Positions 19,358 to 63,869 of a stretch of DNA of 64,000 bases are shown one piece after another. Location: positions 8,246,001-8,310,000 of the forward strand of contig OZ059898.1 of NCBI GenBank assembly GCA_964057225.1. The letters run 5' to 3'. Position 1 is the stretch's first letter. Each line of letters begins with the position of its first letter. The translations under genes and the position numbers were made by a program. The stretch is from Auanema rhodensis (lineage: Eukaryota > Animalia > Nematoda). The notes under the pieces were generated by a model. That model was not told the DNA's origin. It ran no database searches and was given only the letters and a program-made list of their open reading frames with translations.

Positions 19358-22300
19358 GAAATCAAGAGTTGCCAATCAATCAATATTCATAAATAATTTA
19401 CTAATAACGATTGTTTTAATATTTTAAATATTTTATTATGTTGTACGTAACGTTCACTTTATGAACAATCACGGGATCAAAGTTATGGACAAATAAACAA
19501 AGTCATGTTGTAGACATTGTATTTATACACTTACAAAGTAAATTTCATTGACCAATAATGAGAATAATATTTATAACAACGGAATTTTTATAATATGTAA
19601 ATTATTTTTTGGAATTATTTTAACAGAAAGCTCTGTTTATAAATTATTGAGTTGTATAAAAATTGGAGTTAGAGGTTACTCTCCTTATCTACCACCTTGC
19701 TTGCAATTTCAGGGTTTCAGAAATATTTCGATACTCTAGGGACTTTGAGTACTTTTTACGATTTTTACTAAGCATTTCAATTCTATTTTATTATTACTTT
19801 TCAATAGCTATACTATCCTTTTGAATTTGACCAATCGTTTGGATGATTTGATTCCAAATGCGTTGCCATCTCTTAATAGGGGTAAACGGCGTGCCTTGCG
19901 GAGAGGGTGGAGAAATGCACTCGCGGAACGCGTACGTACTTATTTTATTTGGTCTCCAGAGACCTGATGATTTCATGATGCTTCTTCACACAAGCCATAA
20001 TCATGCCCCTTTCTCTTTGTCTGCGCCTCTTCATTTTTGACTATCTTTTTATGGATGAGTCCTAAAGAGGCAAAAGATGTGACACTAGATATATAGAAGG
20101 AATGACCGCTAAAGAGAAACAACATAATATGTACGAAAAGAGGCGGGACATAAGGATCGAAACGGAAATTTCTTTGGAGCAATATCCGTTTGATAGCCTC
20201 TGATTAGCAAATGCGAACAATCTTATTCAATGGCATTACAGTATGTTCACATTTTTTTCCGAGATGTCTTTAAATAAATCTCTCAAGTCATTATAATCAA
20301 TCCTCACTATAGATATATATCATAAGGTAAGAAGAACTTCTTTGAAATGGCACAGAAGACAGTTTCGTGGCAGAAGTATTCTTTCGCTCTTATGAAATTA
20401 TTTTGATCTACAATCGCATACATGATGACTCTTAACAATATCGAAAGAATGCTCTTAGAACTTTCATTTTTGCTTGTCTTTCAGTTTTTTTATTTCAGTT
20501 ATCAATTTCGTTTTTGATTAGTTTTAAATATGTTAATTAATGAATAATGTATCTCACCAGTTTACAACTAAAAACGAAGCTTTTCCTCAGTCTATTTTAC
20601 CTTATGTTTGCTAATTATGCTGCGCATGTTTTCATTATAATGCCTGTTTGTTTTTCGCGTAGAACGCTCACTATTCTGTTTCTTATTCTCTTCATAAATG
20701 TCTTTTGAATCTCTGACTTCACTTAATATTTCTTCATGTTATTCAGAATTATTATACTGTGCTCATGCCCAATATGTTTCATTGGTTCCAAAATAAATAA
20801 TTATGCTCAGCGATCAGTTGTAAATCGAAGATGATGTATCATCTTCATGACTTTAACATCATCAAGCGATATCCAATCCGTTGTTAGCTTTGTCCTTCTC
20901 GCAGCTCGTTGAATGATGTTACTTCATTTCTCCAGAGTAGCCGCTTAGCTTTTCAAACATAGTTTCCATCAGCTGTCTCACCCTTTTAAGCTTTTTCAAA
21001 ACTCACATACTTCCATTTACTCATCTCGGGTTCTTGAAAATTCATTCTTGTCGTTATCCAACTAATCTTCATTCAGTTTTCCGTGTTATATTCAAACTTT
21101 CGATTAGACCAGTTATATTCCTGTAGCCATAATAAAGCATAGTTCAACTTAACCAAGTTTTAGCACTTAAATTGTATTGTATTTTTTCTTTTGTATTCTT
21201 TGTTTTTAGTTTGTTATCTGGTTCTTACATACTTGTAGTCCTGATTTCTTATTCCCCCTCAAATCTTCATACATACCCATGAGCACTTCCATCTGTTCGC
21301 TATTCTTACGCTACTGATACCAGCCGGCCATTTCCATCTAATTGTTTTCGATTATTTATTCTGAACGTTTTGTATCGTTAGTATAGCTTAGTCATCTAAT
21401 TATAATTACATCACTTCATTCTATTCTATTGTTCTCAATTTCATCCTCATCGTTCTTTTACGATCGTCCACATGCACGGCTCTTTACGTTCTTGCTGGCT
21501 GTTCAACGTCTTTCTTGTCGTCATCGTCGACGACGTTGTCGTGAAACCTCCTAGACTATCTACATGTAACGAATTCATTCAGATCGTTTACCAATTTTCA
21601 TGGTTATGTTATCGAATCGCTACTGTATACATCTATCTATTCATGTTCTTCATCTTTATGTCTCGGAAATCCGTTTTCATGTTGTGTATTTTCATTTCAC
21701 TTCTTCTATTGAATAATTGTGTTTATTGAAATTTAACTTACGATATTCTCATTGAATACCAATATCTGATTCGCATTCTTTCATTCACAAACTGTTTTTT
21801 TGTCTTGTTCTTCTTTTCGTACTGTCTATACGTATTTGAATATTTGCTGAACACACGTATAGCTCACGTAAAATGCTTAAGTCATGACTAAATCCTTCAA
21901 TTAGCATAACATTTCTTGGCAGCTGATGGGGCTCAGGCTTCTCGCTGCTTTAGGTAGGAATATGACGGTTTTTTTCCTTTTTTCATCGAGTATTCAACAT
22001 TTGATGCATGTCTCTTCTTCAAAATAGATTTGATTCACGTGTTATATCTATACTCATCATAATTGTTATTTCTGACTTATAATATTCATTCACTTTCTTC
22101 ATACATGTTTGACAGTTATTCTAACTATTTATATATATTAATTATATAAGTGTAGCAGTAGCATGTCAACCTCTTGTAATAACACTTCTGAAGAATCCAG
22201 ATTACTGCGCTTAGTTGTTGGCCTGCACTGACGACGACGACAGCATATTCATCATATTAGGAAACAATATGTTTAACGAGCTAATGAGCTCTTGTTGAAG

Positions 22301-23086
22301 CTGTTGAAGCTGTCGTTTCTCTGGAGACCTACTTAGATGTATCTATTCTTTCTTGCACTGTTCTCTCTCTCTGTTTCTCTCTTACGTTCATATTATTTCA
22401 TAGCCTGTGCATGTCTCATAACTCTCCTAAGCAACAATCTGTCATCCAAGTATTTCCGTTACTTTTGCTTAGCTCAATTAGATCATGTACTAATATTTTC
22501 ATGTGTTAAACTATATAAACTTATTCATGTATATTTTTCATTATCGTTTAAAATCTCTTGGCATCTTTATCATTTATACAGCATTTCATTTTTTTTGATA
22601 CTATTGAAAGGGCTCTCGACCAATTAGCTACTTCTACACCATATTGTTATAACTAAGCTGACCTATATGCATATTTTTTGTTTCTATCATATTACGCTTC
22701 TTTCTTTCATCTCCGTATAGTTCAGCTTAACTAGTTGACATCCATTTTCCCTAGAGGGTGAACGTTCTATTCTATTCGTTCGTCAAATTACCTATCTTGA
22801 TCTCAGAGCTATTATACGCATAGTGCAATTTATTTCCTCTCTCCGAAACCTTCTTAGTCAGGTTCAATGACTACCATACAGAGATTCATTCATTTAAGCT
22901 TTCATCACATAGTCTGAGCCTACAATATAGCTTAATCGCATGAAATTTAAATATTTGTATTTGCCATATTGACTGTGTGTGGTAGCACATATTTCAATAT
23001 AATATATGTATCTGTTAAAATATATTCTCTACATATCTTATAGATCAATATCTTCTTTTTTTAAATGCTTTTTATAATTACAGAGC

Positions 23087-29000: not shown

Positions 29001-30568
29001 GCTTTTCATGACAAGTTCAAGGACAAACCGAAATTAGATTTTCGAATATTTAGCTTACTCCTTCCTTCCTCAAAGTGCGATGCCGGATTTGTAACTGCAT
29101 GCGTTCGATCAGATGATTTCAGCCAGTTCTGAATACTGTCATTTTACTATTCTGAACGTGTGTCATGTTCACGTACCATTTGAATGATAGACGTGTATCT
29201 GGATAGTCGTTTTCAGTCCACACCCACGTAAGGGCGGTTGCATCATGATCAGTTTAGCAAAAAAAATTTACAAATAAACATCTTTCATCGACTTTATTGT
29301 GGTACTGCGAATTAATTTGAAGATATTTGTCCTCCCATATTCTTTTCAAGCTACTATTCATATACATACGTATTTAGATTACCACAGAAGGATATATGTA
29401 ACATGAATTATTATATAAAAACAAATTTGTTTTTGAATGAAAATAACCAAAATTTTTGATTTATAATGAAACAAAATGTAAATCGAATGACTCATTCAAG
29501 TTAGCCAGCCTCATTTTTCCTCCTCTTCCTCCTTCCTACTTCTTTTCTTCTTCTAAGAAAGAAAAGTGACAAAAAGAACTGAAAAAGTAATATATTTGAT
29601 TGATATTATGAGTCATTTTCACTATTTAAAGTAGTTCAAAGTTCAAAAATGAAAATAAAAATACTGATACATGCCAAACTAATTTTACGTTTTTTATTTT
29701 CTTAGAATAGAAAAACAGATGTTCTGACATACTTTTTTTTAAATTATAAACAAGGCATATGTGTTGTATTTTAAAATATTTAATATAATATACATAGATA
29801 CATATGTTATATATAATATAATATTATAATTATTTTTATTATAAATTAAAAAAAAAGAAACTATTGAATGTTAATAGAAAAATAGTTAAATGGGATATTA
29901 GGGTGTGACAACTTGATGTACAGTATGTGAATGTTTCTAGAATCTATATATCTTATTCGTTTTGTCGATTAAATACTAAACCGTCTTTTAGAAAAAACTG
30001 CTTTCACTTTATGTGTTTTCTTCCGATTTGAGGAAGAGTATATTCATTTTCGTGAAATTTCTCTCTAATTCGTTTCTTTTAGAATATTGCATTCAAACAA
30101 TAAATTAATGTTAAAAGTAAAAGAAGATGAGTTTAGAGGGAGAATATGTTTAAGTTCAATAGATCAATTATAGAGAAAAGATAAAATGTTTGGCAGCTTG
30201 TGTCACTCATTTCACTTATGTCATCTCTTGATTAGAATGTTTCTCAATTGATGTTGCAACTTGAAGTGATAAGCTCTTGAATATGTTGAGGATCGACCTC
30301 TTACTTTTGTCTTTTTCACTTGTCCGATGCTAACTTAATAGAGATAACAGAGAAAGAAGAGATTATAAAAGAGCGGATAGATAGATAGTAAAACCATAAA
30401 TGGCCATCTAATTCATTAATGCAAGTGTACATACTCAGCATTGTTGTAAGCAGATGAACAACTGAATGAATAAGTGACGATGCACACACACAAGGCTTCG
30501 GAAAGCATGATGATGGCTGGTTCAGTAATATTCTTTCACTCTCTCTATCGTTTATTATACCCCTCCGA

Positions 30569-30628
<60 letters not shown>

Positions 30629-33600
30629 CTCTCTTTCTCTTTCTTTCTTGACCACTCGCGCATCATCTCTTTCTGTTATACAGCTTTGCTATATGACCAT
30701 ATCCATACATGGTATGACCAAATATTGAGGAATAGAGGATGAATGAAAGATTTCAAGTTAAAGTTGGACCCAGAACACGCAACGCCGTCCGAATCCGATT
30801 GCATCATCTACAGAATGCCGCCTGGTCATGCTTGTGGCCTGCTGACGGACAAAAGAGATCACATCCAGATGACGGACGTTTAGCTGTCTTATCTCTCTTA
30901 GCTCAATGCTGCCAGACGTGTGTTCTGTTAGAGACAGCATGGTAGAAATGCCAACGTCATCTGGCTCTCAGTTCAATTCCAACGTCCATCTACTTCATTT
31001 ACTCAAATCTGATCTTTTGGCAAGATTTCATCCTTCCAACCTCGTTCAGTTTTCTAGTACTTAGCTTGTTCTCAGGATAGTATTTCTTTTCGAACTTTTC
31101 ATTTTCTTTTGATGTTTTCATGAAATTGAATATGAGTTTCGCTTGCTTTATTACTTTGCTTGACTCTTCATTCTACCTCTTAGAAATCCAGATGCCGCGC
31201 GGGGCGATTTGAGGAACACTCTCAGGCTCTTTTCTCTTTGCTTCTTGTGTGGGAAAATTATCTTTTGCAGCAATTCTCTCTCTATATGTACAGATCTTCC
31301 TGTTCTCTCTCCTTTTTCTGGCAACTATCGCTTATCCTCTTCTTCTCTAGTCTTCTCCATTTTCTTTAGTATTTCTAAACGATACAGATGTTTGTTTTAC
31401 CTTGCGCTAGAATCTCGAAGGAAGCTCAACGCTTCGTCCGAATCAGCTTGCAAACGTTTCACACAATCTGGACATCCATTTCTTCATTCTTCATCATCTC
31501 AGCGAATACCTCTCGCATCTTGCGTACTTCATCTGTTTGATCTAGGTACAAGCGATTCATTCGGCTCTGAGCTGGAGGCGAAGACAGTGTGTTATCTCTC
31601 ATGTGCTATTCCCTGCTTTCTCTTCTTTATCTTCTTTCCATGCAAAAGAGCCCGGAGGCAATCTATCTATTGCTTTTCTCATCTTAACCTTGTAGACAGA
31701 CCATCCGGATTTCGATAGATGTCTCTTCTTCTTCTTATTTTCTACTCCCCTCATACGCCTGTCCATTCATCGTCGTCGTTTTTGCTTTTCCTTCTCCGGT
31801 CTCCACCCTTTCATCTGCATATATCAGCTACGAATTCCTCCACGCCTATTCCATTTCCATCCAACGCATTTCGGTTGTTTCTCTTACACTTTCAGTTCTT
31901 TTTCAAGCTTAATTAAAGTATTTCCATTCTTAAAAAGGCGACGACGAACATTTTCTCCAGTATTCGTGTAATGACAACATCAAAAAAACTAAAAACCTTT
32001 TCCAACCTTAACAAATTACTAATTGCTTCTTCTGATTCTCTATCTCTTTGCTTGCATCCATTTGCCCTTTTCATGTTTGTCGTCCTCTAAATTCTTTTTT
32101 CCTTTTAAATTCATTCTATTTCCACTTTGGATTTTTTGTTTCTGACTTTCTACACCATTTCCTCACAAACATACATATGCTTATGCAAATATCTTTATAA
32201 CCTTCAGCCATTTTCTTTTCAATTTTTATGAGAAAGAAGGAGAAAGCCATGATTGTTTTCTCATAGGTCTTGTTTCTCTTTAAAGCCGTTTTTTCGGTTC
32301 AAAACTGAATCTATCAAACCTTTAAATCTTCAACTTCAACAAACTCATTTCAATCATATTCCGCCTTCAACTCTCTAATTCATACTCTCTATTTTCTTCC
32401 TCGGGGAAGACCGCTCTCTGTTATAACTGTGGGATCGTGAGATTTTGCTGGATCATTGTGTGTTGATCCAGCCAAACATATTTTCGTTTTACTCGACTTT
32501 CGGTCAGTTTCGATTTTCATTTCATATTCATACGTCCACATATGGACTTATATCCGGCATTCTATGTGTGTATGTGTGCCAGCTGGCAAACTGCCATTTC
32601 GGTTTCATCAAGCCTGGACAAGCTTGTCTGTAAGCTTTACTATCGCTTTCTTCTTTTGAAGCTTTATGAAATAGAATGCTCAATCGAATAACCGCTGGTT
32701 CTTTTATTCAATCATTAACTATCTTTTCTCCTCATCAACACTACCTCTTCTTGATTTGGTAACCTTCTTCACACGGTCTCTTGATTCCTAATTCTCATCA
32801 TGTAATCATCTTCAGCTAATGTCTATGACATACAGATGTTCACTTAGTGGTCAACTGGATAATGCGCGATTTCCAGCATTGTTTCAGCGTATGAACTATG
32901 CATGTGCTCTCAGATACCGAAATGTTTTCTCTCCATATATCCATCTTTGTATATCTCTCCTTCTCTCTCTCTCCTCTATGTACCTACTGTTTTTCATTGT
33001 TTCTCCCACATCATCTAGAATACTTTTTCCTTCTCTGTCTGCACGCTCTAAATTAAAACTGCTGTTACATCCGACTGTGCCTTACTCTCTCGACTGTCCT
33101 CAGTCTCTATGCATAGCGACCCCTGATGTCCAACAGGCTTCACAACAGAAACAGCAGCCAAGTGACCACCATTGCTTTGGTCCTATGTTTATTCCCTGTT
33201 GCCAAATCTTTTTCTTTTCCCTCTCCCTATTCCCGCTGTCTCGTTTCCAATCCACTTTTCCTCCGTTTTTCTTTTACAACGAAACTTTCTCTCTGTATGT
33301 GTTGGAGTCTAAAGTTCTACACGCATACGGCTACACGTCTGTGCCCTCTGGCGCTTAGAGTTCATCTTTTCTTTTCGTATCACATCGTATACATAATAGC
33401 AATATGATGCTGATTATACCGACTTTGAACAATAATCAGAACTTTCTATGTTTGATCTATCTATCCATTATTCAAATTCTAAACCATATTGCTATTCAGT
33501 TGTTTGATGTATCTCTTTAGCCTCACATAAACATAACTACTACCAATTAGAATAAACATGATGATTTACGTGAAAACAAGACCAACAAAATTTGCTTTTA

Positions 33601-34648: not shown

Positions 34649-34682
<34 letters not shown>

Positions 34683-47380: not shown

Positions 47381-47438
<58 letters not shown>

Positions 47439-49645: not shown

Positions 49646-49702
<57 letters not shown>

Positions 49703-52700
49703 TATCTATCTCTATCTCTATAATCTAGTCATTAATCAGCTAACAAACTAAGGGCAACACACTAACAGAATACTTGAATCTGTTTCCGCTACACCTGCTT
49801 CATATCTTTATAATCATTGATATATAAATATCTATTTAACAATATTTTGTTTTAATTATTAAGAACGAGTTCTATTTTTTTTTAAATCTTATTGATAACT
49901 TATAGTTTTGAGTACAATGTTCTCTAAGTGCATTCATATATTATTCAATTTCCAAACCTTGATATCTCGTGCTGTAATTCAAATGCTTTATACACCTTAT
50001 TCTATTAATACTGTTCATTTTTTAATTTTTCTGCTTCAGATGTCCTCCTCATGTGGTGGTGGAGTTGCATATCCTCCGTCACTCTCCGGACGGCTTTCCG
50101 GCGACGTGATGACCGGACCGAGTTCGTCTTCTTCTGACTCCGCCCATCTGCATCAGGTCAATGTGCGACCCCGCCCTCAGGTTCCACCCAAGCCACCCAT
50201 CGACACAGTCCGATATAGTATGAATAATTTGAAAGGTGGGCCGATTTTTGATCTAATCTATAGGATATATACATAAATATACATTAGTATATCAAGTATA
50301 TAATCTACAAATTATTTTTAATTTCTAATTAAATATCTTTAAAATCAAAATATTTTAAGTTAATTTATATAAAAATTATAATTTACAATCATCTAACAGA
50401 TTATGGTATTTAAATTATTTTTGCTCTTTCTATCTATCTATTTCTATTTCTATCTCTCTCTCTCTCTCTCTCTATTTTGCTCTCTCAACTCGATCATTCT
50501 GTTTATCTATCCATCCACCCCCTCCTTGATATCTCTATTTGATATAAACACTAGAGACGTAATAAGTTCATTTTGCTTTTCCAAAAGATAATTTTGACAT
50601 CAATTTTTTCATTTTATAATCTTTTCCTATTTTCTTTTTTTCTCTTATCAAATAATTCTAATAAAATCAAATAAAGTAGATTATTTCTCTTTTTAGCTAC
50701 TTTACTCCTTTTTTTTCTTTCAAATAATAATTAATTATTCATATAATTTACTTGTTTTGAATTATATTCATGAATTTATTTTGTGAATTGTGTTTCATTC
50801 GAAAACGAATTAGCACGTTTTTCCCAATATTTTTGCCACTTCATTTTCCCCATCCTCACACTCCCTACTCTTCCAATTGAATACAAATTCCGATAACTGA
50901 TTGATTGACTGCTCATTAACACATAGAAATCATAAGCTGTTGTTGCATCAAACCCACGATGTCGTCGCTCTCCTCATCATCATCGCCAACCGCGTCGTCG
51001 TTCATCATTCCGTGTTCCGTATTCTGTCCTTCAAATGTCTTATACTATACGTATAATTAGAAAGCAATGTTTGTTAGCTTGATAATCTGAGTTTAAAATC
51101 AGAAAAGACAATTCTTTTGATTTCATATTCTTCAAACTATATAATATATTTTCAAAATTATCACATTTTCTGCTTGTATACGGCACATCAATATAGCAGC
51201 AGAAGTTAACAACAGCAGTTATGCTAGCAGCATTTCTATTGTAATATATATGTATAGTTATGAGGAGTCACAGTATAGTTAACTAAGTTATGATACCTGT
51301 TCTATGTAGTTCTTCTTTCCTTTATGACAAACCCATATATGATGAATTGCGTTTTACATTACATTGAGTATTGAATGATCAACATCTAAGCTCATACATA
51401 CATTCAAGCTCATCTAAACTTGCATATGATTCTACAAGCTATTCGAACTATCTTCTGTCTAGTCATATATGGTCATCTGGTATCTAGTACATTATATAAA
51501 TAGAAATAGACTATTCTTTCTTTTATTCTTTCAACAGCTTCCCTTTTCTCTCTATTTCTCTTCATTCATTCACACTTACTCACATCATCTCTCTGTATAC
51601 CAATCAACACAGCATAAAGCCTGCTCCAACAGCAGCAAGATCACCCATACACACCAGACTTCTTCATCTCACATCTCTCCTCCTCTCACTTTTACCCACT
51701 TTCTCTTTTTCTTTCATACGCTTCCTTCCCAATGTCTATGTGTTCACAGCTTTCTTCTTGTATTTCTTAACCGTAAATGGAAAAGTTTGGCTTATGTTCA
51801 TCCCTTTGCTAACTCTCAGCGAGTCAACTTTCGCCATTCTCTCTTTATATTGGCCACTTTAGGCCTTCTCTGTATACAAACAATCATATAACCTTATATG
51901 ACCATCGTCACCCATTCCCTCTGTCTCATTCTGATTGATTACCACTCTTTCTCTCCTCATTCTCTTATTTTCTTCTCAGTATCTTATACTGTTACCTTTC
52001 TTTTTCCTGATTTTCTTTCAATCTTCTACCCTACTCCCTTTTTCACAATTTTTTTAACCTTTGAAATCTTTCTCAATTTCCTTTCTTTTTTCCAATCCAA
52101 ACAAATCATCATCCCCTTGCCTTAGTTTTGCCATCTGAGTCAACCTCATACATACGCTTCAACAGCTCTTCTAGCACCTGTTGTGTCCTTTTCCTTCCAT
52201 CACCTATCTATACCATCGTAAAGGTTTTTCATAACATCTATTCTTCTAATTAAAGAAAAAAAACTTTTCAAAAACTTCATTAAACCTTTCCATATAATGA
52301 AATAAATATTTAAATTCTCTATTCATTGATTTTTCTCATATTTTCATATTGTATACCATGTGCTTCAATCGCTTTTCCGTTTCCAAATTTACCATTTCAA
52401 ATATAAATATTTAAGAAATTGATCATCAACTGTATACATAATTCTATAAAACTTAATCGGCTTCATATTGATTGATTGAAAAATCTCATCTGAAAAGAGT
52501 TTGATAAGAATTTTGTATGTCTAAGACAATTTGTTCTGGAAAGGAAATATATATACATATATAAGATAAGGTTAAAAGCAACTGTTCCATATGTTGTCAT
52601 ATCAGAAACACATTGAACAGCGTGGTGAGTTTTGCTAAGCTTTATCATCATTACCACAGTTTTTATCAATCAAAATCATAATCTTATTATCATTTTTCTT

Positions 52701-55700
52701 TATTTTTTTCAAGCCTTGTATTGATATTCTAATTTTATTGATAATATATCTAAATATTTTATATAATTAATATATTTAGTTAACTATATGTCATATGAAT
52801 ATTTTCTAAAACCTTTTGGACGACTCTTCTTTAACTCTCAAACTTTTTCTAGATAAACTCATTAACATTCTATATTTCTTTCCTCAAGTTACTATTTAAC
52901 TTAAAAAAACAACATAAAAGAGATGATTATAAAAACAAAACAAAAAAGAAAAGTTTTTTATTCAAAAATTCCAATATGTTCCCATTTCTAACTCTAAGCA
53001 CCTGTTTCAGAATCGAACGAATGGCAGCTGGACCAGCTTCTGGAGGAGCTGTCAGCTCTAGAAACACAGCTGAATTCTTCAACTGGAGATCAGCTATTGC
53101 TTGGAATTCCGACTTTACCTCAGGCAACGTCCGGAGTTATTACCAAGCAATCAAACCTTCCACCGACGACAAACCATATGAGCACAGACTCTGCCAGGGT
53201 ACGTTTCATTATCACTACAACAGTTTTTTTTTTCGGAAATTCTTTGATGGGTTTTGAGACGTTTTTTTGAATATTCACGACCTTCAAACTGATTGATGAG
53301 TCTTCGCGCCTAGTACTCATCTAATTATTCTCTGATTCCTATTTCTTACCTAATTACTTACAAATTTATAAAATGATTCTGTCTTAAAATAAGGATTGGC
53401 CTCGAAAAAGGAGCCAAGCATCCTTATGTGACCTGTAACCTCATCCCACAGGCTACAAAGCTCCTTCAATCTCATCATCATAATTGCTTTTTTGGAGAGG
53501 AAAGAAAAACAGTTATTTTGCTGATCATTGACAGACGGCCCAGAAGGATGATGAAGACGAGGGTCATTATCATCTTCGTCAGCATCAATGCTTCTGGCAA
53601 GATGAGCTTATGGTGTACTCACATATCATGTTATATGTTGCTGAAAGAGTAAGAGTTGTGTTCAGAGCTGCTTGCCACTCTTTCTTTCTATATATCTATC
53701 TGTCTCTCTTAACCCCTCTTTTGTTTAGGGTTCACTATTTGTTTCCTTAGTCTGTAAAAGGGTGTCTGTCCTTCCAGCTTAAGCTCTAAGGCTGTACTGG
53801 ATTCAGGTCCGTATGTGTTGAGGCTTATTATCTGGTCAGCAGCTAATCTCATAATACGGTTCTGGAGAATCGCTGGAGCAAGAATATCTCTCATTCATCT
53901 TCTCAATCTCTGCGTTCTCTCGAAATACTCAACTGTCTTGCTTTACTTCGTCTTATGGCATCGTGATTCAGATGAGGAAATCCGAATTGAATTCAGCCTT
54001 AGCATCACTACAAGCCTGATGATGATCAGTGTAAATGTCTTCATTCGGCAAGATTTTCTTTAATTTCCTCAATTCTATTGAACTTGAGTTCAATTATGCG
54101 TACATCAAGTAATAATTTTTCTTTGAAAAAAAGAAAATAAAGACGATGTAAAAAGTTTTCAAAATATTTATTAATCTCATATATCATTATGTTATTTTAT
54201 AATATAATCTAATAATTTTGATTATTAATTGACATTTACTGATCATATCCAGATATGAGTAGAGATTGAACTATAAGATGACATGGGAACCATACTTCTC
54301 TAGGTCAATCTCTCAAGTATGTATGTCAGAAAAAGTAAACACACAATGCAAAAAACTAAGACTCTAAGGTTGTAATAGGCTTGTAACCTCAGCTATTTTT
54401 TGCTATTTTCTCTGGCGATCTCTTCAGTTTTCGGAATATTTTCTTTTGTGATCTTGTTCGGGCTCTCATCTCTCAGCCATATCCTGTAAACTCTTTAACA
54501 CCTCTATCGTGACCTATAGAAACATTAGTTCAAGGGGGGTTTTTGGTTTATATTTTGACCATACAAATGGATTTAATGGTTTGTTATATGATGGGAATTA
54601 GCAATATGAATATTCGCTAAATTAATCTTTTAAAATGGCAATGAAATTGATATTAGTTGGAAGTTAACCTACATATCATTTGGCTGAAGGTGTTGAAATT
54701 GAAAAGAGAGAAAGAGGACAGTTTTTTTCTTTTGTTTGAAATTAAAAAAAAATTATACTATATAGATATATGTATAATGATATTTCTATAAAATAGTATA
54801 AATATGAGATGAAGGCAGTAGAAGAGAGGTACTTATCGTTTGTGGATCTATATAAATTCTTCTGGTTCGCTTGTCTGTCCATCATGTTAACGTTTTCATC
54901 GTTAACCCTCGAACTTGAATATCGAGGAATACTGGTTAGTCGGACAGAGACAATTCACACAGACAGTACATATAAATTATCTAGATAGTATAGTTAATGA
55001 TGAGATATATGTATGTAGAAGTGTAGTGTGACGAGTAATCGTCTGACTGATAAATCCGACTGATGAAGACATGTGGACCATTGAGTTTTGGCCTTGTATG
55101 GACTTGCCACGCTAATCTGTACCTTGTCTACTCAATCTATCTATCTATATATATATAGATAGTGTATACTATATAGATAAATGTACTATGTGGATCTTCT
55201 TTGAATGAAAACAGAGGAAATTGAGATTAAATATGATGTAAAAGAAGATTTAATCGATGAAATTCAACCGCTATATCAACGTCAATATAAACAAAATAAA
55301 TCAAATAGCTTGATTTTTACTTTTTTTTTTACGTAAATTCATGTTATTTGAATTTTTTGTTTTCAATGTTGTACGTGTGAATAGATATTCATCACATCAC
55401 ATACAATGCGCAAATTAATTTGTTCATTTCACAAAGAAAGTTCGAAGAAAGAGTGAAGAAAAGAGAAGAAAAAATGTTTTTTTCTGCTCTTAACCTCGAA
55501 AATACAATAAAGGAAATGAAAACTAAACAAGTAGTGATCTTAGTTTGTACAGTTTTCTATAGTATTTTGACTGCAAAGTCATTAGGTAATGTTGGTTATT
55601 TCATTTTGTCTTTTGCATCCATCATCCTCTCTTACAATCCAACTAATCTGTTAGATCGTTTGACCGTTTATGGTAATAAACTGGATGATTTTCCGAAAAT

Positions 55701-58700
55701 CGTTTTGAGAGTCTCATGGACAGGCAAATAGTCAAAACATATGCATATGTATTGACTATATATGAATAGATAGTTATAGAGATTGCTTTAGGGGTAAGAA
55801 TATTTAACACATCCTCATCAACCAGTACCATAGTATTGCATTACATGTCCTTCGTTGCTCTTCTGGAGGCCATTGAGTAACAATTGAATGATGAACCTGT
55901 TGACGTTGCCATTAAAGAACAATACTGAAGCAATTAGTTATAATAGTATTTAGCACTCAACATGTTAATTGTCGTTGAATAGAATAAGTTAACAGGATGA
56001 CCGCTGATACAATAAATGTGGGAAATGATGTTGTTGTTGATGATGATGATGATGATCTAACCCTAATTTGCATTAAAATATTCCTCATAATCGTTTCATC
56101 ACAAAGAATTTATTTTATTTCATCAAATATTTATGGGATTCTTCTATATTTTCTGTGTTTCAGATTGGTAATGGTCCAACTCTCACGTCGTCCTGCTCAT
56201 CTCCAGATGGTGATTCTGCTTTTGGTGACAGTTCTTCTACTGAATCAAGGTAATATCATGCTTCTTCTGTATAGTAACAACTTGTTTTTAGGAATCGAAA
56301 TAGTGCTTTCTCATCTTCGAACGACAGCTGTCGTGATTCCCTACATACTCCTAGCCCAACCCAGGTACAGTTAATACAACACATTGTGTTAAACAAACCT
56401 CTTTCTTCGAAGCAATCGAAACGAGGTGGAAAAGCAAAAGGGGGGGGACGGAATTTTTCGTTGAAGGACTAATTAATTATTTTGTATTGTTCTCTTGTGT
56501 AAATCTAATTGCTAACATGAGATTACTGTATGCCATCCATCTGTGGATATATTGAAACAGTTTTTACTCCTCACATACCGACTCATATGACGCAATGACG
56601 TCATACAGTGAGGTATTGAGGAAGTATAGGAGGTAACAGAGATTCATGAGTGCTTCTTATTTATATAACAGATGGGAGGAAGTTCTGGATGTTTCTTTAA
56701 CTATGTATTCAACATAGTTAAAGACAAAGAAAAAGAAAGAGGGAGAGAGAGAGATAGTAAGGCTATTATCATACTTCATGTATAAAGAAAAAAATTGGAG
56801 GGAAGTTAGGAGAGATAATGTGAATATAAGAGAACTGTTAGAGACAGAAGCAATATAGAAATAGTTCTATATGGGCCTTAAAGAAGTAGAGAATGAGACA
56901 GAAGGTCTCTACAGAAGGCCAGGAGGCAAAGGCTGTGTAGGTATAGGTTAGAACATCGAAAAGAAGACAAAAGAGGCTGAACAGCTGGTGTTGTCATTTG
57001 CTTTTAGTAGGACATATACGTGTATATTCACAGACTCTTACTTAAACTAACCACATACAGCTTGCAGACCTCTCACTACTTGTCCTACATCCATAATTTC
57101 TTTTCAAAAAAGAAAATGTTTGAAAGAAATTGTTTTGAATATTTATGTTGAAGATTCAATTGAAAACTAGAAAATTACAAATACTGTAATCCGATGAAGA
57201 TAAAATATAGATTAGTAAAGAAATATTGAAATCTTACTATTTCAAGTCAATTAAAGATATTTTTCGAATTAAAAACATATTTTGGCATTTGAAATCGTAT
57301 TTTAACGATTCAATGTACTTAATCTTTCTTAGAATATACTATATTATCTACAGTATATATATATATGTATATATTTAAAAGAAAGAATGTTAGAAAGGAT
57401 AGATAGAAAAATAGAAAAAAAGGCTAACTACAAGAACAAATGAGATGTAGCTGTTGTCACCTTGTTTCAAAAAGATTTTTTTGTACAATTTGACAACGAA
57501 TCTAATGTTGTAATGAAAGAAAGAGAAAGGATAAATAATTAAGACAAGTGATTTATCAGCTGTTTTACAATATATTTTCTCTTTTTTTTAATTTTTTTTA
57601 CAACTTTTAATCTTGTGTCTGCCATACTTAGAAACTTATGATGAAGTAGTTTGTAATGAATAGTTCAGACATTAGATTGAGTAGATGAAACATGTCACCA
57701 AAGTAATATTTTATATAAATTATATTAGAATAGTTAATATTGATTTATATAAAAAAAAAAGAAGAAAATTCCTAGTTAATAAGAATGTTGATCATATAAC
57801 ATTTACATTTGAAATTCAGAAGACAATTGAAAAGCAATGTTTTTTTCTGTAAATCTCAAATGTTTCTGATTCACAGTATTAGTATTCATAAAAGGAAAAA
57901 TCATTTCTGATTCATCCAGCTTTGATTCATCATTCATGTTTCATGTTATGCGTACCATTGAGATACAGGTACCGTTAAGATCCTTTCCCTCTCTTTCTCT
58001 GTCTTTCTCTCTTATAAGAGAATACAGAAAGAAGTTGTATGAGGATGTCATAACAAAAAAAAAAGAAGTTTTTTTTCTTTTTCAAATGAACATGGGATAA
58101 GTAAGATATGTGAGGAACAGACTATTTCATTCATCTTTCAACCACTTTTTTCATTTCCACACAATACTCAATTTCTATTGTTTCTTTTAAAATACATACA
58201 TATAGTGTTGAATAGAGTTAAATATTTTCTTTTCTTTTACCTATTCCACAATATTTTCCATACAAATCGTCATATGAGATCTTTTGATGACAGCTGGCTT
58301 ATATATCATATAATAGACGATTTCCGTTTATGGTCTGCCGGAAAGCTTTGTGAGATGAATCAGACTAGCTATTTACTATTAAAGCATTGGAACTGATACC
58401 GCTTTTGATACTCATATAAAGGAAATATACTGATTGAATTTCATTTAAAATTAAAATTAATATTCATATGAAGTTATGATGATCAAAATCTTTTTTGAGT
58501 ATATTTTCCAGTTATTAATGTATTAATAACTATAACATGATGCTTCATTTATGTTTTTTTCTCTTGTTGTTGTCCTTATTATACTTCCGTAATTTCTTGT
58601 CATTGAAAGCAATCTAAAGCCACTAATCAACAGATTAACTTCACTTAGATATCTATCTGCTTAGATGATTATGTGTGTTCTTTTGACATACCCTGTTATT

Positions 58701-59615
58701 CCGTATTTGGCAATCTGTCGAAGCGGCAAACATCAAAGCTTCAAACTACGTGCCACAGCAGGCGCATTCGCTAGACGGCGGCATCTGAGCCATCCGGTTA
58801 AGCGACGTGTTGGAAGCGGCTTTCGTCAGATTCTTCTGCTCTTGCTCTCGGTAGAGGTTAAGATGTAATTGAGAAGGAAAACAGGGAAATGGTGTAGGGG
58901 GGGGGGGGAGTGAATATATGTTTGAAGCGGAATGGTTTGAGCTGACGTCATATTTAGCTTGATAGGCTAATGTTGCGAACAGTAAAGCATTGCCGGTAAA
59001 AGTAAAAGCTTGATCGTTTAAGTTATATAAACGATCCATCAAATAGTCAATGTGTTTACATTGTTTGTGCCGCTTTGCCTAAGGCAATTTCGTATAGAAT
59101 GATATCAATTGTTCTTTAATATCAATTACTTTTATCGGCAATTCTTTGATCTAAATGATCTGTAATACTGACATTAAGAATAATAATAATAATAATATAA
59201 ATAAAATAATATCATTTGGTTAAATAAGGAATTAAAAATAGAATCTTATCAATTTTATTTTAACGGTATTTTAAATTTTCACGTGTATCACGTATCATTC
59301 ATTTACTATTAATTGAGTTGACGCCCTTAAACGGCTGTTGAATGATAGAAAAATATGAAGAAGAAGCATATTTTCAGCATTATTTCATATTTTCTATTTG
59401 ATTATTATAATAATAATAATTATATTTATTATTATTTAAATAATAGAAACTAATACTAAAATAATGTCTAATTTCATGACTATTTCATTACTGTATATGT
59501 TATATAATAATAATTATTATTAATTTTTAATATCAATATAGCTTATACAATATATATATATTTTTTATATAAAAAGAATAATGAAAATTACCTAATTCAT
59601 TCATTATGTTTCAAT

Positions 59616-59646
<31 letters not shown>

Positions 59647-62600
59647 CTCTCTCTTTCTCTTAATTTTACTTATATGTATATACATAAATGTATAAATGTA
59701 ATGCATATGGATAAGCTATAGGTTATAGACTCTTGAGATATTATACGGTTATATAATATAAATTTTCAAGAGATTATAATATATATATATATATAGTATA
59801 TAGTATATAGTTAAATAAAACATATATGTATTTAAGTAAAGACTTATAGGGTGACAGGTTTTACAACCTATTTTGATCTAAGCTGATCAAGCTGTTGTTA
59901 ATAATAAGCTTATCGTCTAAAACTTGTCCCAAAAAAAAAACATAATGTTATTGACCTATATGCTTAAGATTTATTTTTGTTTTTATTTATGTTTACAACA
60001 ATAACAAGAAAAAAGAAATTATTAATTAGATTTTCATGTACGGTTGATTTAACAACAAAACCCTTACCGATTGAGGAATAAAAGTGAAATGAAGGAGATT
60101 GAAGGCTGACCTTTTGTCACAGAAAACCCCTAAAGAAATAGGAGAGAGATTACATAAAACAAGGAGATTTATAGAGAATAAGAGGTTAGATTTATGCTGT
60201 CAACGTAGTTCTCAAGTCGGCTTGGCTCAATTGCCTTATTGCGTAGTCATTACCATAATCAAATGTTTGGACATCTGTCTATACGATACAATATAGTTAA
60301 AAGAATTAACTATACCTTATTATTGAAAAAATATAAAAAATCATATAATAAAAGGTAAAATGATAGAATATTTGAATAAAACTATATGAATATAATAGTT
60401 ATCGTTATGAAAATGACAATAACTGATTTCTATTCATTTCACTTAATTCAACAAAAAAAAAGAAGAAAAAATTTTACTTTAATGGTTATGATTGTTATTA
60501 AAATCAAAACTCATTGTACTTGTATTCTAAGGGTGTCAAAACCAATCATTCTTTATGGCTTGATGACGTCAAGTTTTGAAATATCATGAAACATTGTGAC
60601 TTGTTGACTTATTCACATTATACTTCGTCTGTTAACCTTCAGAAAGATGAAATTTTAAATTTATTCAATAACTATTAATATTATTAAACTATATTGAATA
60701 ATTAGAAATCTTCAATATGTCAAGATTGTTATTCTGACAAAAGGTTCTCACGATTTTCGGATTCTTTCCGGACGAGTCACAATTCTCTACAGGTTGCATT
60801 CACATTTCAATGATTTCAATACATGAAATCACAGTACGATGTCAATTCATTTGGTTGTATGAAATGCAAATTGACAACGATCAAACATGAAAAAAACATT
60901 TTTTTGTTTGAATTTCCGGATATCTTAACACAGATTTCGGATGTATCCATCACTTTGTCGACACAAGTATACCGGTTATATAGTATTTTCAATTGGCAAT
61001 AACTATTTTTTCCATTAAAACAGCATGAAATAAACAATTTACAAGATGAGTTAGAAATTTGAAAATAGTATGTATATGTGAATATTCTAACAAATATTCT
61101 TCTTCTTCAAAAAAAAATTTAATTTTAAACAAATGGTTTATATAAATTTATTTATTTCAGATATCACCTAGATCAACTGAATTATCACCAGAAGAGATAA
61201 AAGCTGCTAAAATCAAGCAAGCATTAGAAAAGATGAAAGAAGCTAAAGTCACAAGAATATTTGTTAAATTTTTCGTTGAAGATGGAGCACCTCTTCAGAT
61301 GTTAGTTGATGAACGATGGACAGTTTCAGAGGTAAAACATAGATTAGAATTACAAATATAAAATATTTTCTTTTAAGACAATGAAACAATTAGCTGAAAA
61401 ACATCAAATAACATTATCTGAAGATCAATGTATTGTTGAAGAATATCCAGATCTTTATATACGTAAGTTATAATTATATTTTAAATTATAATATATATAT
61501 TGTTTGTAGGTCGTATATATGAAGATCATGAAAATTTGGTTGAAAATATACAAATGTGGCTACAAGATTCTCCAAATAAGCTTTATTTCATTCGTCGTCC
61601 AGATAAATATCCATTTATTGGTAAAATTAGTTGAAATTTATTTTCATTTCATATTCAAATACTGTTGTAGATCGCCCAGAACTTTACTTAGTCACAGAAA
61701 AAACTACTGACATTGAAGTTCCTCAAGGAACTACATGGACACGTGATGTGAAACAACAGTTTGTTGAAGATTTCTTCAATCGCGAGACTGTTGTTCCTCC
61801 TGAAATGGATGGATTCCTATATCTGAAAGCTGATGGTAGAAAAAGTTGGAAGAAATACTATTTTGTGTTGAGACCAAGTGGATTATACTATGCTCCAAAA
61901 GGCAAAAAAGCTGTGTAAGTGAAATTAAAAATGAAATACAATACTAGTATATATGTTATAGATCTTCAAAAGATTTACAATGTCTAATGAATTTACATTC
62001 AAATCAAGTTTATTCTGGAATTAACTGGTCCAAGAAATATAAAGCACCAACTGATTATTGTATTTCAATTAAGGTAATTATTTGATTTATTATAATATTA
62101 TTTATTATATTATTATAGTTAACACAATTACAAGTTAAACGATCACAATATATCAAATATATTTGTTGTGATGATGAGCCAACTTTCCGAAAATGGATTG
62201 TTGCTCTTCGGATAGCTAAGAATGGAGCTGCTATCTATCGCAACTATGAAGCTGCTTGTGAGATACGTCGTAATGCTTTGAACTCTGCTCCAATTCGTAA
62301 TAATACTCTATCTCGAATGGAATGCTCATCATCGGTTCATGATAACTTGAGTGTGAATACTACTGGACATCATCAACCAAGTTCTTGCACATCCAGCCAG
62401 CATGACCTTCGTATTCTTGCCAATAACAAGAATATGCCATCTCCATCACAAATAAGTCGTCTTAGTCAGATGACTACAATCAGTGATCGAAGTGTTGCTC
62501 AATCAACTGCATTTGATGTTTATCCTGGAGCTAACAGCTCAACTGCTGGTAGCTGCTTGAATCTTCGCGATCAATCCCTATCTTCCCTTCGGTTTGATGA

Positions 62601-63093
62601 GCAGCCGACCGGCACCATCAAGCGAGCTCCTTTGGATGTGATCCGCCGAATGAGCCAAAGCTCTTCGAATGATCGCGGAAGCACAGTTGGTACTCCAGAC
62701 GATGACTCTGATGAAGATTTCCCTGCTCCACCTCCTGTATCAGTTCAAATGCACAACATCAGCCGTACCACAACGCCGACTCAAGTAAGCTTTTCATTAT
62801 CTCAAACCGTTCTCACGCAATCCTTCTTTCAGAATGGCGTATATCCACCAACAGCTCCACCAAAGCCTGCATACCAGAAGCCCAGCGCTCCACCAACACC
62901 CGTACGACAAACACCTGTCCCAGCCCCATCTCCAAGTCCAGGAGCAACAACGCCGAAAAAAGTTCCACCACCGCCACCGAAACGTTCTGATGCCACCCGC
63001 ATCCTAACATCAGCGGCCGCCGTCACACCGCACATGAACGATCTAGAAGCAGCTCTAGCTCGACGACGCGAAAAACTTGCTCAGCAGGTCTGA
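23087..63093 (+). CDS. mig-10: MIG-10/Lamellipodin/RIAM (MRL) RA-PH adaptor protein, about 861 aa
   Basis: Phase-consistent exons: 23087-23190, 35070-35358, 50040-50235, 53011-53198, 56164-56249, 56292-56364, 61161-61331, 61378-61462, 61510-61620, 61671-61914, 61962-62073, 62119-62784, 62833-63093. Motifs: RPQVPPKP; [17 protein letters not shown]; [12 protein letters not shown]; RA domain (FVKFFVEDG...[11 protein letters not shown]); PH domain ([27 protein letters not shown]...WIVALRIAK); FPAPPP; PPPPPKR. The first two exons are less certain than the rest. Confidence 0.92.
30574..30622 (+). repeat. (TC)n microsatellite
   Basis: About 24 TC units. Confidence 0.95.
34654..34680 (+). repeat. 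(TA)n microsatellite
   Basis: About 13 TA units. Confidence 0.9.
40190..40215 (+). repeat. (GA)n microsatellite
   Basis: Imperfect GA run. Confidence 0.85.
47375..47432 (+). repeat. (TC)n microsatellite
   Basis: Interrupted TC run; it produces the RERERE ORF on the minus strand. Confidence 0.95.
49649..49698 (+). repeat. (TC)n microsatellite
   Basis: About 25 perfect TC units. Confidence 0.95.
59616..59642 (+). repeat. (TC)n microsatellite
   Basis: About 13 TC units. Confidence 0.9.
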
Positions 63094-63869
63094 GCAAGTA
63101 TTATATAGCTTTATGAATGTCTTATTTTACGATAATGTAATCGAAATTATTACAATTCATGAGCTTGTATGATTAGTTTGTTGATTTATATCTTTCCAAA
63201 TTCTCACATTCATTCATTACGTCACTCTCACTCATACATACATATATCGTTGTCGTCTATTCAAGTTGTTAATCGGTCTTCTTGCTCAATTTTACGGTAT
63301 CAGAATCGCTCCAGGATCTCTTGTTTGTAATCCTTCTTCTGGAGATTCGAGGCCGTATTTCATTGTCGTTCTAAGTCATGTGCCCGCTTATTTCTAAGAA
63401 ATAGTATATAAAATATATATAAATATAAATATATTATGTATAATTTTTATCATTTTTATTATTATTTCTTTATAATATTATGACTTAATGTTCTTAACCA
63501 TCCATGTCAAATGAGATACATTGTTCTTGTGACCGGTGTTTAGTCCCCTTCCCCCTTCTCCCTCCTTTAACTAATCGGATCCTTTTTTCATGCTTCAACA
63601 AACAAAACCTGACAGTTCATCAACCATCATCAGTTAGCTTAATAACAAAACTTTCTTTGTCTTCATCCATTTTTTTCTTTAAATTTCCATTCGAATCAGT
63701 CTTAATCTATTCGTCGTATTATCACGTGTTCCATTTCAAAATCACCATTTAGGTCCTTATATTGTTCTTCAATGTTGTCGTTTTCATTACTGTTCTCTAT
63801 ACATAATAGCTATACAATACTATATTCTATAGATTTATTAAAAATTTTATAATTCTTTTATGAAAAATT

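What the first reader, a model, noticed from the sequence alone, without database searches (positions are those of the whole stretch)
22237..63357. Dispersed set of self-complementary structured islands across the mig-10 locus (candidate new system)
Seen: against a pyrimidine/AT-rich background, more than 15 GC-richer islands of 60-250 nt consist of nested short inverted repeats. Many have a closing stem around 2-3 internal hairpins (22237, 24297, 28961, 29091, 30865, 32395, 40984, 41328, 44865, 47017, 48244, 53540, 53800, 54874, 56565, 57007, 58738, 60794, 63293). They share architecture but not primary sequence, so they do not look like copies of one transposon. Several need G-U pairs that work on the + (sense) strand. 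Inference: either (a) cis-acting RNA folds in a 40-kb pre-mRNA, for example compacting long introns in a genome tuned to ~45-nt introns or yielding stable intronic/small RNAs, or (b) enhancers built from palindromic TF sites. Caveat: found by eye, and GC-richer sequence folds by chance.
Basis: partly seen in the sequence, partly recalled or inferred. Interest (0 to 1): 0.75.

Follow-up and report, generated by a model that had tools for sequence, protein, structure and literature searches.

The report
Ordinary short hairpins in mig-10 introns
The "structured islands" in this roundworm's mig-10 gene are not a new system: they are mostly GC-richer, unique stretches that look folded because the surrounding DNA is pyrimidine-only, plus a real but modest, strand-symmetric surplus of small hairpins, and a few of them probably carry transcription-factor sites.

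Summary
The 19 islands exist, are GC-richer than their flanks (0.43 vs 0.31), share no sequence, and 15 of 19 were checked to be single-copy. They do not form a coherent set of RNA structures.

- **Composition:** it explains about 80% of the variation in fold energy across the locus.
- **Architecture:** a closing stem around 2-3 hairpins appears at chance frequency in shuffled sequence.
- **Island z-scores:** they average -2.6 on both strands, against -1.4 to -1.9 for shuffled segments selected in the same way.
- **Strand:** there is no sense-strand bias.
- **Known families:** no Rfam match and no long dsRNA-type inverted repeats.

The real signal is a roughly 2-fold surplus of small hairpins (8-14 bp arms, loops under 60 nt; 58 observed, 31 expected). 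It fades with distance, is absent from the neighbouring 20 kb, and is matched in some other genomic regions. This is ordinary local inverted-repeat content of nematode non-coding DNA.

One locus-specific extra was found. ACGT-core motifs are enriched (TGACGTCA 4 vs 0.23 expected; CACGTG 7 vs 2.2), and ACGT is the most enriched 4-mer in the islands.

Covariation could not be tested, because the tool that would fetch the orthologous Auanema locus was closed. Interest is low.

The parts
35071..63093 (+). mig-10 (MRL/lamellipodin family) gene body. Exons are supported by homology at 35071-35361, 50031-50255, 53004-~53196, 56161-56367, 61158-61625 (with a short intron), 61667-61915 and 61963-63090. 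The stop codon TGA is at 63091-63093.
   Evidence: tblastn of Auanema sp. JU1783 protein P0021, C. elegans MIG-10 P0024 and Diploscapter P0020 against the window.
22237..63357 (.).
   Evidence: Exact-extent folds and z-scores on both strands, tool cross-check, single-copy checks and no mutual similarity.
53540..53597 (.). Strongest reader island. It is a single 24-bp imperfect hairpin in the intron after the 53-kb exon.
   Evidence: z = -6.1 (+) and -4.1 (-), with 0 and 1 of 200 shuffles folding as well.
56565..56626 (.). Hairpin island built around a perfect CRE octamer (TGACGTCA at 56596) next to TGACGCAA, about 200 nt downstream of the exon at 56161-56367.
   Evidence: z = -5.0 (+) and -5.7 (-).
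40521..40640 (.). It is single-copy.
   Evidence: z = -3.8 (+) and -5.5 (-). The only genome match is itself.
41095..41177 (.). Hairpin with 11-bp perfect terminal arms. It is single-copy.
   Evidence: Arms. The window at 41081 has z = -4.6 (+) and -6.0 (-). Single-copy status.
56694..56724 (.). Perfect hairpin with a 13-bp stem and a 5-nt loop. It is an example of the short-range inverted-repeat surplus.
   Evidence: It lies within the low-z region 56521-56920.
29156..29229 (.). Cluster of 4 ACGT cores inside reader island 29091.
   Evidence: 4 clusters of 3 or more ACGT within 120 nt were found, against 0.8 expected.
30876..30985 (.). Cluster of 4 ACGT cores in and next to island 30865. The 10-bp closing stem of that island carries inverted TGACG half-sites.
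44932..44976. Two CACGTG E-boxes and one TGACGTG within island 44865.
40984..41095 (.). Island 40984, with two matches to the C/EBP-type consensus RTTGCGYAAY about 10 nt apart. These two sites form one of its internal stems.
   Evidence: Sequence. z = -3.5 (+) and -4.1 (-). The motif reading is my own knowledge, and the motif is not significantly enriched locus-wide (3 vs 1.4).

Best explanation
There is no single system here. The islands are a mixed set of unique, GC-richer, purine/pyrimidine-balanced patches in the upstream region and long 5' introns of a mig-10 ortholog.

**Why they look folded.** The surrounding + strand is CT- and AT-rich and cannot pair with itself, so any balanced patch stands out. 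A 7-10 bp 'closing stem' within 60-250 nt is expected by chance about a hundred times or more in 41 kb.

**What is real.** On top of this, the locus carries a modest (about 2-fold) surplus of small DNA-level inverted repeats. Their arms are 8-14 bp and their loops are under 60 nt. They are equally foldable on both strands and are single-copy. This is the ordinary local inverted-repeat content of nematode non-coding DNA.

**Likely origin (inferred, not shown).** Short-range replication template switching, small fold-back duplications and self-complementary AT-rich low-complexity sequence, all tolerated because the DNA is weakly constrained.

**A subset with a possible function (inferred from motif enrichment only).** Some islands (24297, 29091, 30865, 40984, 44865, 56565, 58738) contain ACGT-core or bZIP-type palindromic motifs. 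They are most likely cis-regulatory DNA for mig-10's alternative promoters. In these islands, repeated copies of a self-complementary motif produce apparent stems.
For: - **Composition.** Native fold energy against shuffled-mean fold energy gives R2 = 0.80 (+) and 0.76 (-). Island windows average -27.4 kcal/mol native against -23.3 shuffled, and all windows average -15.3 against -14.5. So about 73% of the contrast between islands and background comes from composition.
- **Chance closing stems.** Perfect stems of 8 bp or more with a 20-250 nt spacer: 277 expected, 410 observed. For 7 bp or more: 959 expected, 1243 observed.
- **Distance decay of non-low-complexity inverted repeats.** Observed/expected is 2.1, 1.9 and 1.7 at spacers of 0-10, 10-30 and 30-60 nt. 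It falls to 1.33 and 1.16 at 60-120 and 120-250 nt, and to 1.05 at 500-1000 nt. The control region (1-20 kb) shows no excess.
- **Selection-matched null.** Stem-closed segments in shuffled copies of the locus number 18-32, with mean z of -1.4 to -1.9 and 2-5 segments below z = -3. The real locus has 32, with mean z -2.1 and 8 below -3.
- **Architecture.** The closed multi-hairpin form appears in 64% of such shuffled segments.
- **Strand symmetry.**
- **Patchiness is not the cause.** The excess survives a 15-nt block shuffle (native lowest in 14.3% of windows), so true complementarity is present.
- **Not unique to mig-10.** Of 9 random non-satellite 10-kb regions, L011 (20%) and L018 (12%) match or exceed the locus.
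- **Copy number.** Single-copy. The genome 'repeats' in the locus are (CT)n and (TA)n microsatellites.
- **Motifs.** ACGT 15 vs 5.5 in the islands (rank 1 of 136 4-mers) and 94 vs 60 in the locus (z = 5.1). The control gives z = -1.1 and the background z = 0.8. TGACGTCA 4 vs 0.23, TGACGT 19 vs 8.5, CACGTG 7 vs 2.2, none of them enriched in the controls.
- **Literature.** Structured introns and inverted repeats are common in C. elegans genes, and the exact structures are not conserved between species (PMC6239182). Template switching creates hairpins de novo (PMC10710096 and PMC8794818).
Against: - The locus-wide excess of stable folds is real (11% against the 4.8% null), and it is higher than in the adjacent 20 kb and in most sampled background regions. 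Some locus-specific cause is therefore not excluded.
- Nine islands individually beat all 150 shuffles on at least one strand.
- No cross-species comparison could be made, so selection on the structures is not excluded.
- The template-switch origin is inferred, not demonstrated.
- The motif enrichment was noticed after looking at the sequences. The all-4-mer scan is unbiased, but the 6- and 8-mer tests are post hoc.
Confidence: 0.7

Rival explanations
1. Enhancer reading applied to most of the set. The islands would be cis-regulatory modules of mig-10's alternative promoters. Their self-complementarity would be a by-product of clustered palindromic transcription-factor sites of the bZIP CRE/C-EBP type and the bHLH E-box type.
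For: - ACGT is the top enriched 4-mer in the islands, and it is enriched in the locus only.
- There are four perfect TGACGTCA sites against 0.23 expected, and seven CACGTG against 2.2.
- Three of the four ACGT clusters coincide with reader islands.
- The islands are GC-richer than their flanks, as regulatory elements in AT-rich introns often are.
- The stems of 30865, 40984 and 56565 are formed by inverted half-sites.
Against: - Only about 9-10 of 19 islands contain any ACGT.
- The flanks of the ACGT cores are heterogeneous, with no single extended motif.
- ACGT count does not correlate with fold z (Spearman 0.02), and the fold excess is unchanged in windows without ACGT.
- There are no conservation, accessibility or expression data.
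- The motif choice was partly post hoc.
Confidence: 0.17
2. RNA reading. The islands would be selected RNA structures in the mig-10 pre-mRNA that compact long introns or give rise to stable intronic or small RNAs.
For: - The locus shows more low-energy windows than shuffles do.
- Some single hairpins have pre-miRNA-like size and stability, for example 53540-53597 (z = -6.1), 56565-56626 and 40521-40640.
- The gene's 3' introns are about 42-127 nt, so the long 5' introns are unusual for this gene.
Against: - There is no sense-strand advantage, either overall or in the islands. Among 36 low-z regions the minus strand is the lower one in 21.
- No Rfam family matched at the gathering threshold or at E <= 1. 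The only hits were TA-rich low-complexity matches.
- There are no tRNA-like genes.
- The closing stems and multi-branch architecture occur at chance frequency.
- Mean fold energy is about -0.13 kcal/mol per nt at 37 C, far from the -0.5 (computed at 20 C) used to define structured C. elegans introns.
- It is not shown that 22-35 kb is transcribed as part of mig-10.
Confidence: 0.05
3. Decayed fold-back or MITE-type transposon relics. Each island would be an old palindromic element that has diverged beyond recognition.
For: Palindromic MITEs are common in nematode introns (PMC6239182). Some hairpins, such as 41095-41177 and 40521-40640, have terminal inverted arms.
Against: - 15 of 19 islands and the strongest extra hairpins match only themselves in the 181-Mb genome.
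- The islands share no sequence with each other.
- No target-site duplications were seen around 41095-41177 (inspection of the sequence).
- The high-copy matches in the locus are microsatellites.
Confidence: 0.05

Closest known systems
Local inverted repeats and 'structured introns' of Caenorhabditis genes (Reich and Bass 2018, PMC6239182)
   Same: Both are intronic, self-complementary and strand-symmetric DNA-level inverted repeats spread through long non-coding parts of genes. In C. elegans the exact structures are reported not to be conserved between species.
   Different: The C. elegans set is defined by inverted repeats of 20 bp or more, or fold energy below -0.5 kcal/mol per nt, and is often transposon-derived and ADAR-edited. 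Here the arms are 8-14 bp and the sequences are unique. Mean fold energy is about -0.13 kcal/mol per nt, and the only repeats of 20 nt or more are low-complexity.
Template-switch-generated hairpins (Monttinen and Loytynoja, PMC8794818 and PMC10710096)
   Same: Both are short-range, near-perfect inverted copies with small loops, arising in unconstrained DNA on either strand. The surplus here decays with spacer length, as a local mutational process would predict.
   Different: No outgroup or polymorphism data were available, so no individual template-switch event is shown. This is an inferred origin only.
Homotypic clusters of palindromic bZIP/bHLH sites (CRE TGACGTCA, E-box CACGTG, C/EBP RTTGCGYAAY) in enhancers
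   Same: The motifs are self-complementary, so repeated copies pair with each other on paper. They are enriched in this locus and in several islands.
   Different: Binding, accessibility and conservation are untested, and only about half the islands contain such motifs. The assignment of motifs to factors rests on general knowledge, not on a test made here.
Intronic miRNA or mirtron precursors
   Same: A few single hairpins (53540, 56565, 40521) have comparable length and stability, and fold on both strands as miRNA hairpins do.
   Different: There is no Rfam miRNA match, no splice-site-defined ends, no small-RNA evidence and no conservation test. Most islands are multi-branched and do not resemble pre-miRNAs.

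Membership tests
Curated structured RNA families (Rfam 15) | Covariance-model match at or near the family's gathering score | tested here: not met
   There were 0 hits at the gathering threshold over the whole window. At E <= 1 over 22-64 kb the only hits were three sub-threshold miRNA-model matches (27-29 bits against gathering scores of 87-90); the two mir-297 matches lie in TA-rich low-complexity sequence. ARAGORN found no tRNA or tmRNA.
Functional RNA structure (general) | Fold stability specific to the transcribed (+) strand | tested here: not met
   Island mean z is -2.61 on both strands. Locus-wide, the minus strand is slightly more stable.
Functional RNA structure (general) | Compensatory base changes across species | not testable with these tools
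   The closest relative found is Auanema sp. JU1783 (protein P0021).
MITE or fold-back transposon | Multiple related copies in the genome | tested here: not met
   15 of 19 islands, plus the hairpins at 40521 and 41095, match only themselves.
MITE or fold-back transposon | Terminal inverted repeats flanked by a target-site duplication | tested here: inconclusive
   Inverted arms are present by construction. No duplication was seen flanking 41095-41177 by inspection. This was not examined systematically.
ADAR-substrate / editing-enriched long dsRNA (structured introns, PMC6239182) | Inverted repeats of 20 bp or more within 2 kb, or fold energy below -0.5 kcal/mol per nt | tested here: not met
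   All inverted repeats of 20 nt or more are AT-rich or (CT)n/(GA)n low-complexity at 70-96% complementarity. Mean native fold energy is -15.3 kcal/mol per 120 nt.
Cis-regulatory module with palindromic TF sites | Over-representation and clustering of specific binding motifs relative to composition and to control DNA | tested here: met
   ACGT is rank 1 of 136 4-mers in the islands, with locus z = 5.1 against -1.1 and 0.8 in the controls. There are 4 ACGT clusters against 0.8 expected. TGACGTCA is 4 vs 0.23 and CACGTG is 7 vs 2.2. This applies to only about half the islands.
Cis-regulatory module with palindromic TF sites | Sequence conservation, open chromatin or reporter activity | not testable with these tools
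mig-10 / MRL (RIAM-lamellipodin) gene | RA and PH domain exons collinear with known MIG-10 proteins | tested here: met
   tblastn shows collinear exon matches to C. elegans MIG-10 (P0024), Diploscapter (P0020) and Auanema sp. JU1783 (P0021). The homologs carry PF21989 and PF00169.

The most novel reading that the evidence does not exclude
The locus-specific, short-range surplus of about 25-30 small hairpins is not neutral. On this reading a subset, for example 53540-53597, 56565-56626, 40521-40640 and the hairpin spanning the stop codon at 63075-63099, is maintained as functional RNA or DNA structure. Possible roles are hairpin-derived small RNAs or co-transcriptional aids to splicing of the unusually long 5' introns. 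This would act alongside a CRE/E-box-rich enhancer landscape controlling mig-10's alternative promoters.
Probability: 0.06. Interest if true: 0.5.

Novelty: already known. Interest (0 to 1): 0.14.

Why it matters
As it stands, the finding matters little. It shows how a pyrimidine-rich background and selection by eye can make ordinary GC-richer patches look like a family of RNA structures. It also gives calibrated nulls for such claims in this genome: a selection-matched null, a comparison of the two strands, and a test of how the excess changes with spacer length.

Two small points may be useful to people working on mig-10/lamellipodin regulation or on nematode genome evolution:
- CRE and E-box type ACGT-core motifs are enriched specifically in this locus, which is a testable hint about transcriptional control of mig-10's alternative promoters.
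- The surplus of short hairpins decays with distance, which fits a local mutational origin such as template switching.

Tried and rejected
- **Rfam and ARAGORN.** Rfam at the gathering threshold and at E <= 1, and ARAGORN, gave nothing.
- **MITE or repeat-family origin.** Rejected. The islands are single-copy, and the multi-copy hits in the 20-kb genome queries are (CT)n and (TA)n microsatellites.
- **Random 10-kb genome regions as background for inverted-repeat counts.** About half turned out to be satellite arrays with extreme counts in either direction, so only 9 non-satellite regions were used.
- **Compositional patchiness as the cause of the fold excess.** Rejected, because a 15-nt block shuffle keeps the excess.
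- **ACGT motifs as the cause of the overall fold excess.** Rejected, because there is no correlation and the excess is the same in windows without ACGT.
- **Long dsRNA / ADAR-type inverted repeats.** None found.
- **Islands as coding exons.** None of the 19 overlaps the homology-supported exons.
- **Technical points.** A first sliding-window run timed out and one literature query was malformed.
- **Human DNA.** Nothing in the window looked human.


Full report
**Context**

The window is G000:C6:8246001-8310000 of a 181-Mb nematode assembly. Earlier notes from this scan call the species Auanema rhodense. I did not verify the name.

The closest full-length relative of the gene is a protein of Auanema sp. 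JU1783 (P0021). It is 60-93% identical exon by exon.

The gene is a mig-10 / lamellipodin-family ortholog on the + strand. Exon matches to P0021, to C. elegans MIG-10 and to a Diploscapter protein lie at 35071-35361, 50031-50255, 53004-53132 (probably extending to about 53196), 56161-56367, 61158-61625, 61667-61915 and 61963-63090. The hits carry RA-like and PH domains.

However, homology supports the gene only from 35 kb onward. Whether 22-35 kb is intron, 5' UTR or upstream DNA is not shown.

**Is the observation there?**

The background description holds. From about 21 to 53 kb the + strand has strongly negative GC and AT skew, with long (CT)n tracts. From 53 to 61 kb the skew disappears.

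- All 19 islands are GC-richer than their flanks (mean 0.43 vs 0.31).
- They share no sequence with one another (best match 11 nt, E 0.05).
- 15 of 19 match only themselves in the whole genome.
- The multi-copy matches seen with 20-kb queries are (CT)n and (TA)n microsatellites, not the islands.

**Is it more than chance?**

*Composition.* Over 1,047 windows of 120 nt, native fold energy tracks the mean energy of dinucleotide shuffles, with R2 = 0.80 (+) and 0.76 (-).

| Windows | Native (kcal/mol) | Shuffled mean (kcal/mol) |
|---|---|---|
| Island windows | -27.4 | -23.3 |
| All windows | -15.3 | -14.5 |

About three quarters of the visual contrast is therefore composition. A CT-only strand cannot pair with itself, so any purine/pyrimidine-balanced patch looks folded by comparison.

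*Closing stems.* Perfect stems of 8 bp or more with 20-250 nt between the arms are expected 277 times in shuffled copies of the locus and are seen 410 times.

*Architecture.* The islands have 2.1 hairpins each, against 2.0 in their own shuffles. Of segments closed by an 8-bp GC-containing stem in shuffled copies of the locus (about 22 per copy), 64% show 'closing stem plus 2 or more hairpins'.

*Island z-scores.* With boundaries set on the closing stems, mean z is -2.61. Nine of 19 islands beat all 150 shuffles on at least one strand, and the strand folding reproduces the values. This selection is biased. The same selection applied to shuffled loci gives mean z of -1.4 to -1.9, with 2-5 segments below -3. 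The real locus gives 32 segments, mean z -2.1, with 8 below -3. In fixed windows only about 6 of 19 islands reach z <= -3.

*GC content.* Windows with GC > 0.45 behave like the null. The strongest excess is in the most AT-rich windows.

**What is real**

Across 22-64 kb the native sequence is more stable than all 20 shuffles in 11.0% (+) and 11.7% (-) of windows, where the exact null is 4.8%. In 53-61 kb the figures are 13% and 18%. In the neighbouring 1-20 kb they are 3% and 6%.

The excess survives a shuffle that preserves composition in 15-nt blocks (14.3%). It therefore reflects true complementarity and not patchiness.

Resolved by spacer length, the surplus is short-range:

| Arm length | Spacer (nt) | Observed | Expected or ratio |
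|---|---|---|---|
| 8 bp or more | under 60 | 58 | 31 expected |
| 9 bp or more | under 10 | 6 | 1.3 expected |
| 8 and 9 bp or more | 500-1000 | - | ratio 1.05 |

The control region shows none of this.

So about 25-30 extra small hairpins (arms 8-14 bp) are scattered over 41 kb. Examples are 32447-32472, 48291-48338, 56694-56724 and 28961-29011. The longer imperfect hairpins at 40521-40640 and 41095-41177 belong to the same picture.

This is not unique to mig-10. Among nine random non-satellite 10-kb regions the overall figure is 6.3%, but two regions reach 12% and 20%.

**RNA or DNA?**

- The two strands are correlated (r = 0.54), and the minus strand is slightly more stable (mean difference 0.10, p = 0.03).
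- The islands average -2.61 on both strands, and the + strand is the more stable one in 10 of 19.
- Among 36 regions with z < -3, the minus strand is the lower one in 21.
- No Rfam family matches, even at E <= 1.
- There are no inverted repeats of 20 nt or more apart from low-complexity ones.
- Mean fold energy is about -0.13 kcal/mol per nt at 37 C. This is far from the -0.5 (computed at 20 C) used to define structured, ADAR-edited introns in C. elegans (PMC6239182).

**The enhancer alternative**

An unbiased scan of all 136 strand-collapsed 4-mers puts the self-complementary ACGT first in the islands (15 vs 5.5 expected).

| Motif | Region | Observed | Expected | Note |
|---|---|---|---|---|
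| ACGT | Locus | 94 | 60 | z = 5.1 |
| ACGT | Adjacent 20 kb | - | - | z = -1.1 |
| ACGT | 90 kb of background | - | - | z = 0.8 |
| TGACGTCA | Locus | 4 | 0.23 | sites at 23930, 56596, 58943, 60564 |
| TGACGT | Locus | 19 | 8.5 | not enriched in controls |
| CACGTG | Locus | 7 | 2.2 | not enriched in controls |

Clusters of three or more ACGT within 120 nt occur four times, against 0.8 expected. Three of the four fall in reader islands 29091, 30865 and 44865.

In several islands the stems are formed by inverted copies of such motifs:
- TGACG half-sites form the 10-bp closing stem of 30865.
- TGACGTCA next to TGACGCAA lies at the centre of 56565.
- Two RTTGCGYAAY matches lie in 40984.

The assignment of these motifs to bZIP or bHLH factors is my own knowledge, not a test made here.

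This is genuine but limited support for cis-regulatory DNA in a subset:
- Only about half the islands contain ACGT.
- The flanks of the ACGT cores are heterogeneous.
- ACGT content does not predict fold stability, and the fold excess is unchanged where ACGT is absent.
- The 6- and 8-mer tests were chosen after looking at the sequences.

**Most likely explanation**

The set is heterogeneous. It combines a composition-driven illusion with selection by eye, laid over an ordinary, strand-symmetric surplus of short local inverted repeats in weakly constrained non-coding DNA.

The distance decay fits a local mutational origin such as replication template switching, which is known to create hairpins de novo (PMC8794818 and PMC10710096). 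No individual event is shown here.

Some islands are probably regulatory DNA for mig-10's alternative promoters.

| Reading | Probability |
|---|---|
| Heterogeneous mix as described | about 0.7 |
| 'Mostly enhancers' | about 0.17 |
| Selected pre-mRNA structures | about 0.05 |
| Decayed fold-back transposons | about 0.05 |

**What could not be done**

The decisive test is conservation and covariation in orthologous Auanema loci.

The exon-level identity of 60-93% to JU1783 suggests that long stretches of intron may not align in any case, although islands under constraint should.

**Verdict**

The 'new system' interpretation is not supported, the enhancer alternative is weakly supported for a subset, and the novelty is that of an already known, ordinary feature.

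Noticed in passing
window 63075-63099: A perfect hairpin with a 10-bp stem and a 5-nt loop spans the mig-10 stop codon. The TGA at 63091-63093 lies in the 3' arm. Such short-spacer 10-bp stems are rare by chance. The cause and any function are unknown.
   Followed up: partly
window 53041-53160 (stem about 53096-53151): This is the strongest + strand fold in the locus (z = -6.4 on +, -2.9 on -). It lies inside the conserved coding exon at 53004-~53196, roughly 50-100 nt upstream of a likely 5' splice site (AGG|GTACGT at about 53197).
   Followed up: partly
window 23930, 56596, 58943, 60564: There are four perfect CRE octamers (TGACGTCA) in the mig-10 locus, against 0.23 expected. There are none in the adjacent 20 kb, and 1 (against 0.75 expected) in 90 kb of background. 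CACGTG is also enriched (7 vs 2.2).
   Followed up: partly
window 21000-53000 versus 53000-61000: The + strand has strong pyrimidine skew (C>G, T>A, with (CT)n tracts) from about 21 to 53 kb. The skew stops abruptly at about 53 kb, although the gene continues. The 53-61 kb stretch is also the most hairpin-rich part (native lowest in 13-18% of windows). The reason for the switch is unknown.
   Followed up: no
window 30532-30674, 47372-47474, 49638-49727, 50420-50486, 59609-59660: Long (CT)n microsatellites give dozens of genome-wide matches and dominate the whole-genome DNA searches. The (TA)n-rich tracts at 34644-34694, 46539-46665 and 59772-59840 behave the same way and are trivially self-complementary.
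   Followed up: yes
window 58738-58817: This is an 80-nt patch with GC 0.59 in a 0.27 GC background. It is single-copy, has two ACGTG cores, has no Rfam hit and folds only marginally better than shuffles (z about -2). It could be a regulatory element or an unannotated exon.
   Followed up: partly
loci L002, L004, L008, L010, L014-L017, L019 (random 10-kb samples of G000): About half of the randomly sampled 10-kb regions of the large contigs look like satellite arrays, with inverted-repeat counts far above or far below the shuffled expectation. This fits a satellite-rich germline genome.
   Followed up: no
window 55381-55728 (+): There is an open frame of 116 codons, with a Met-initiated hydrophobic stretch, inside the intron between the 53-kb and 56-kb exons. 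It was not tested and may be spurious.
   Followed up: no
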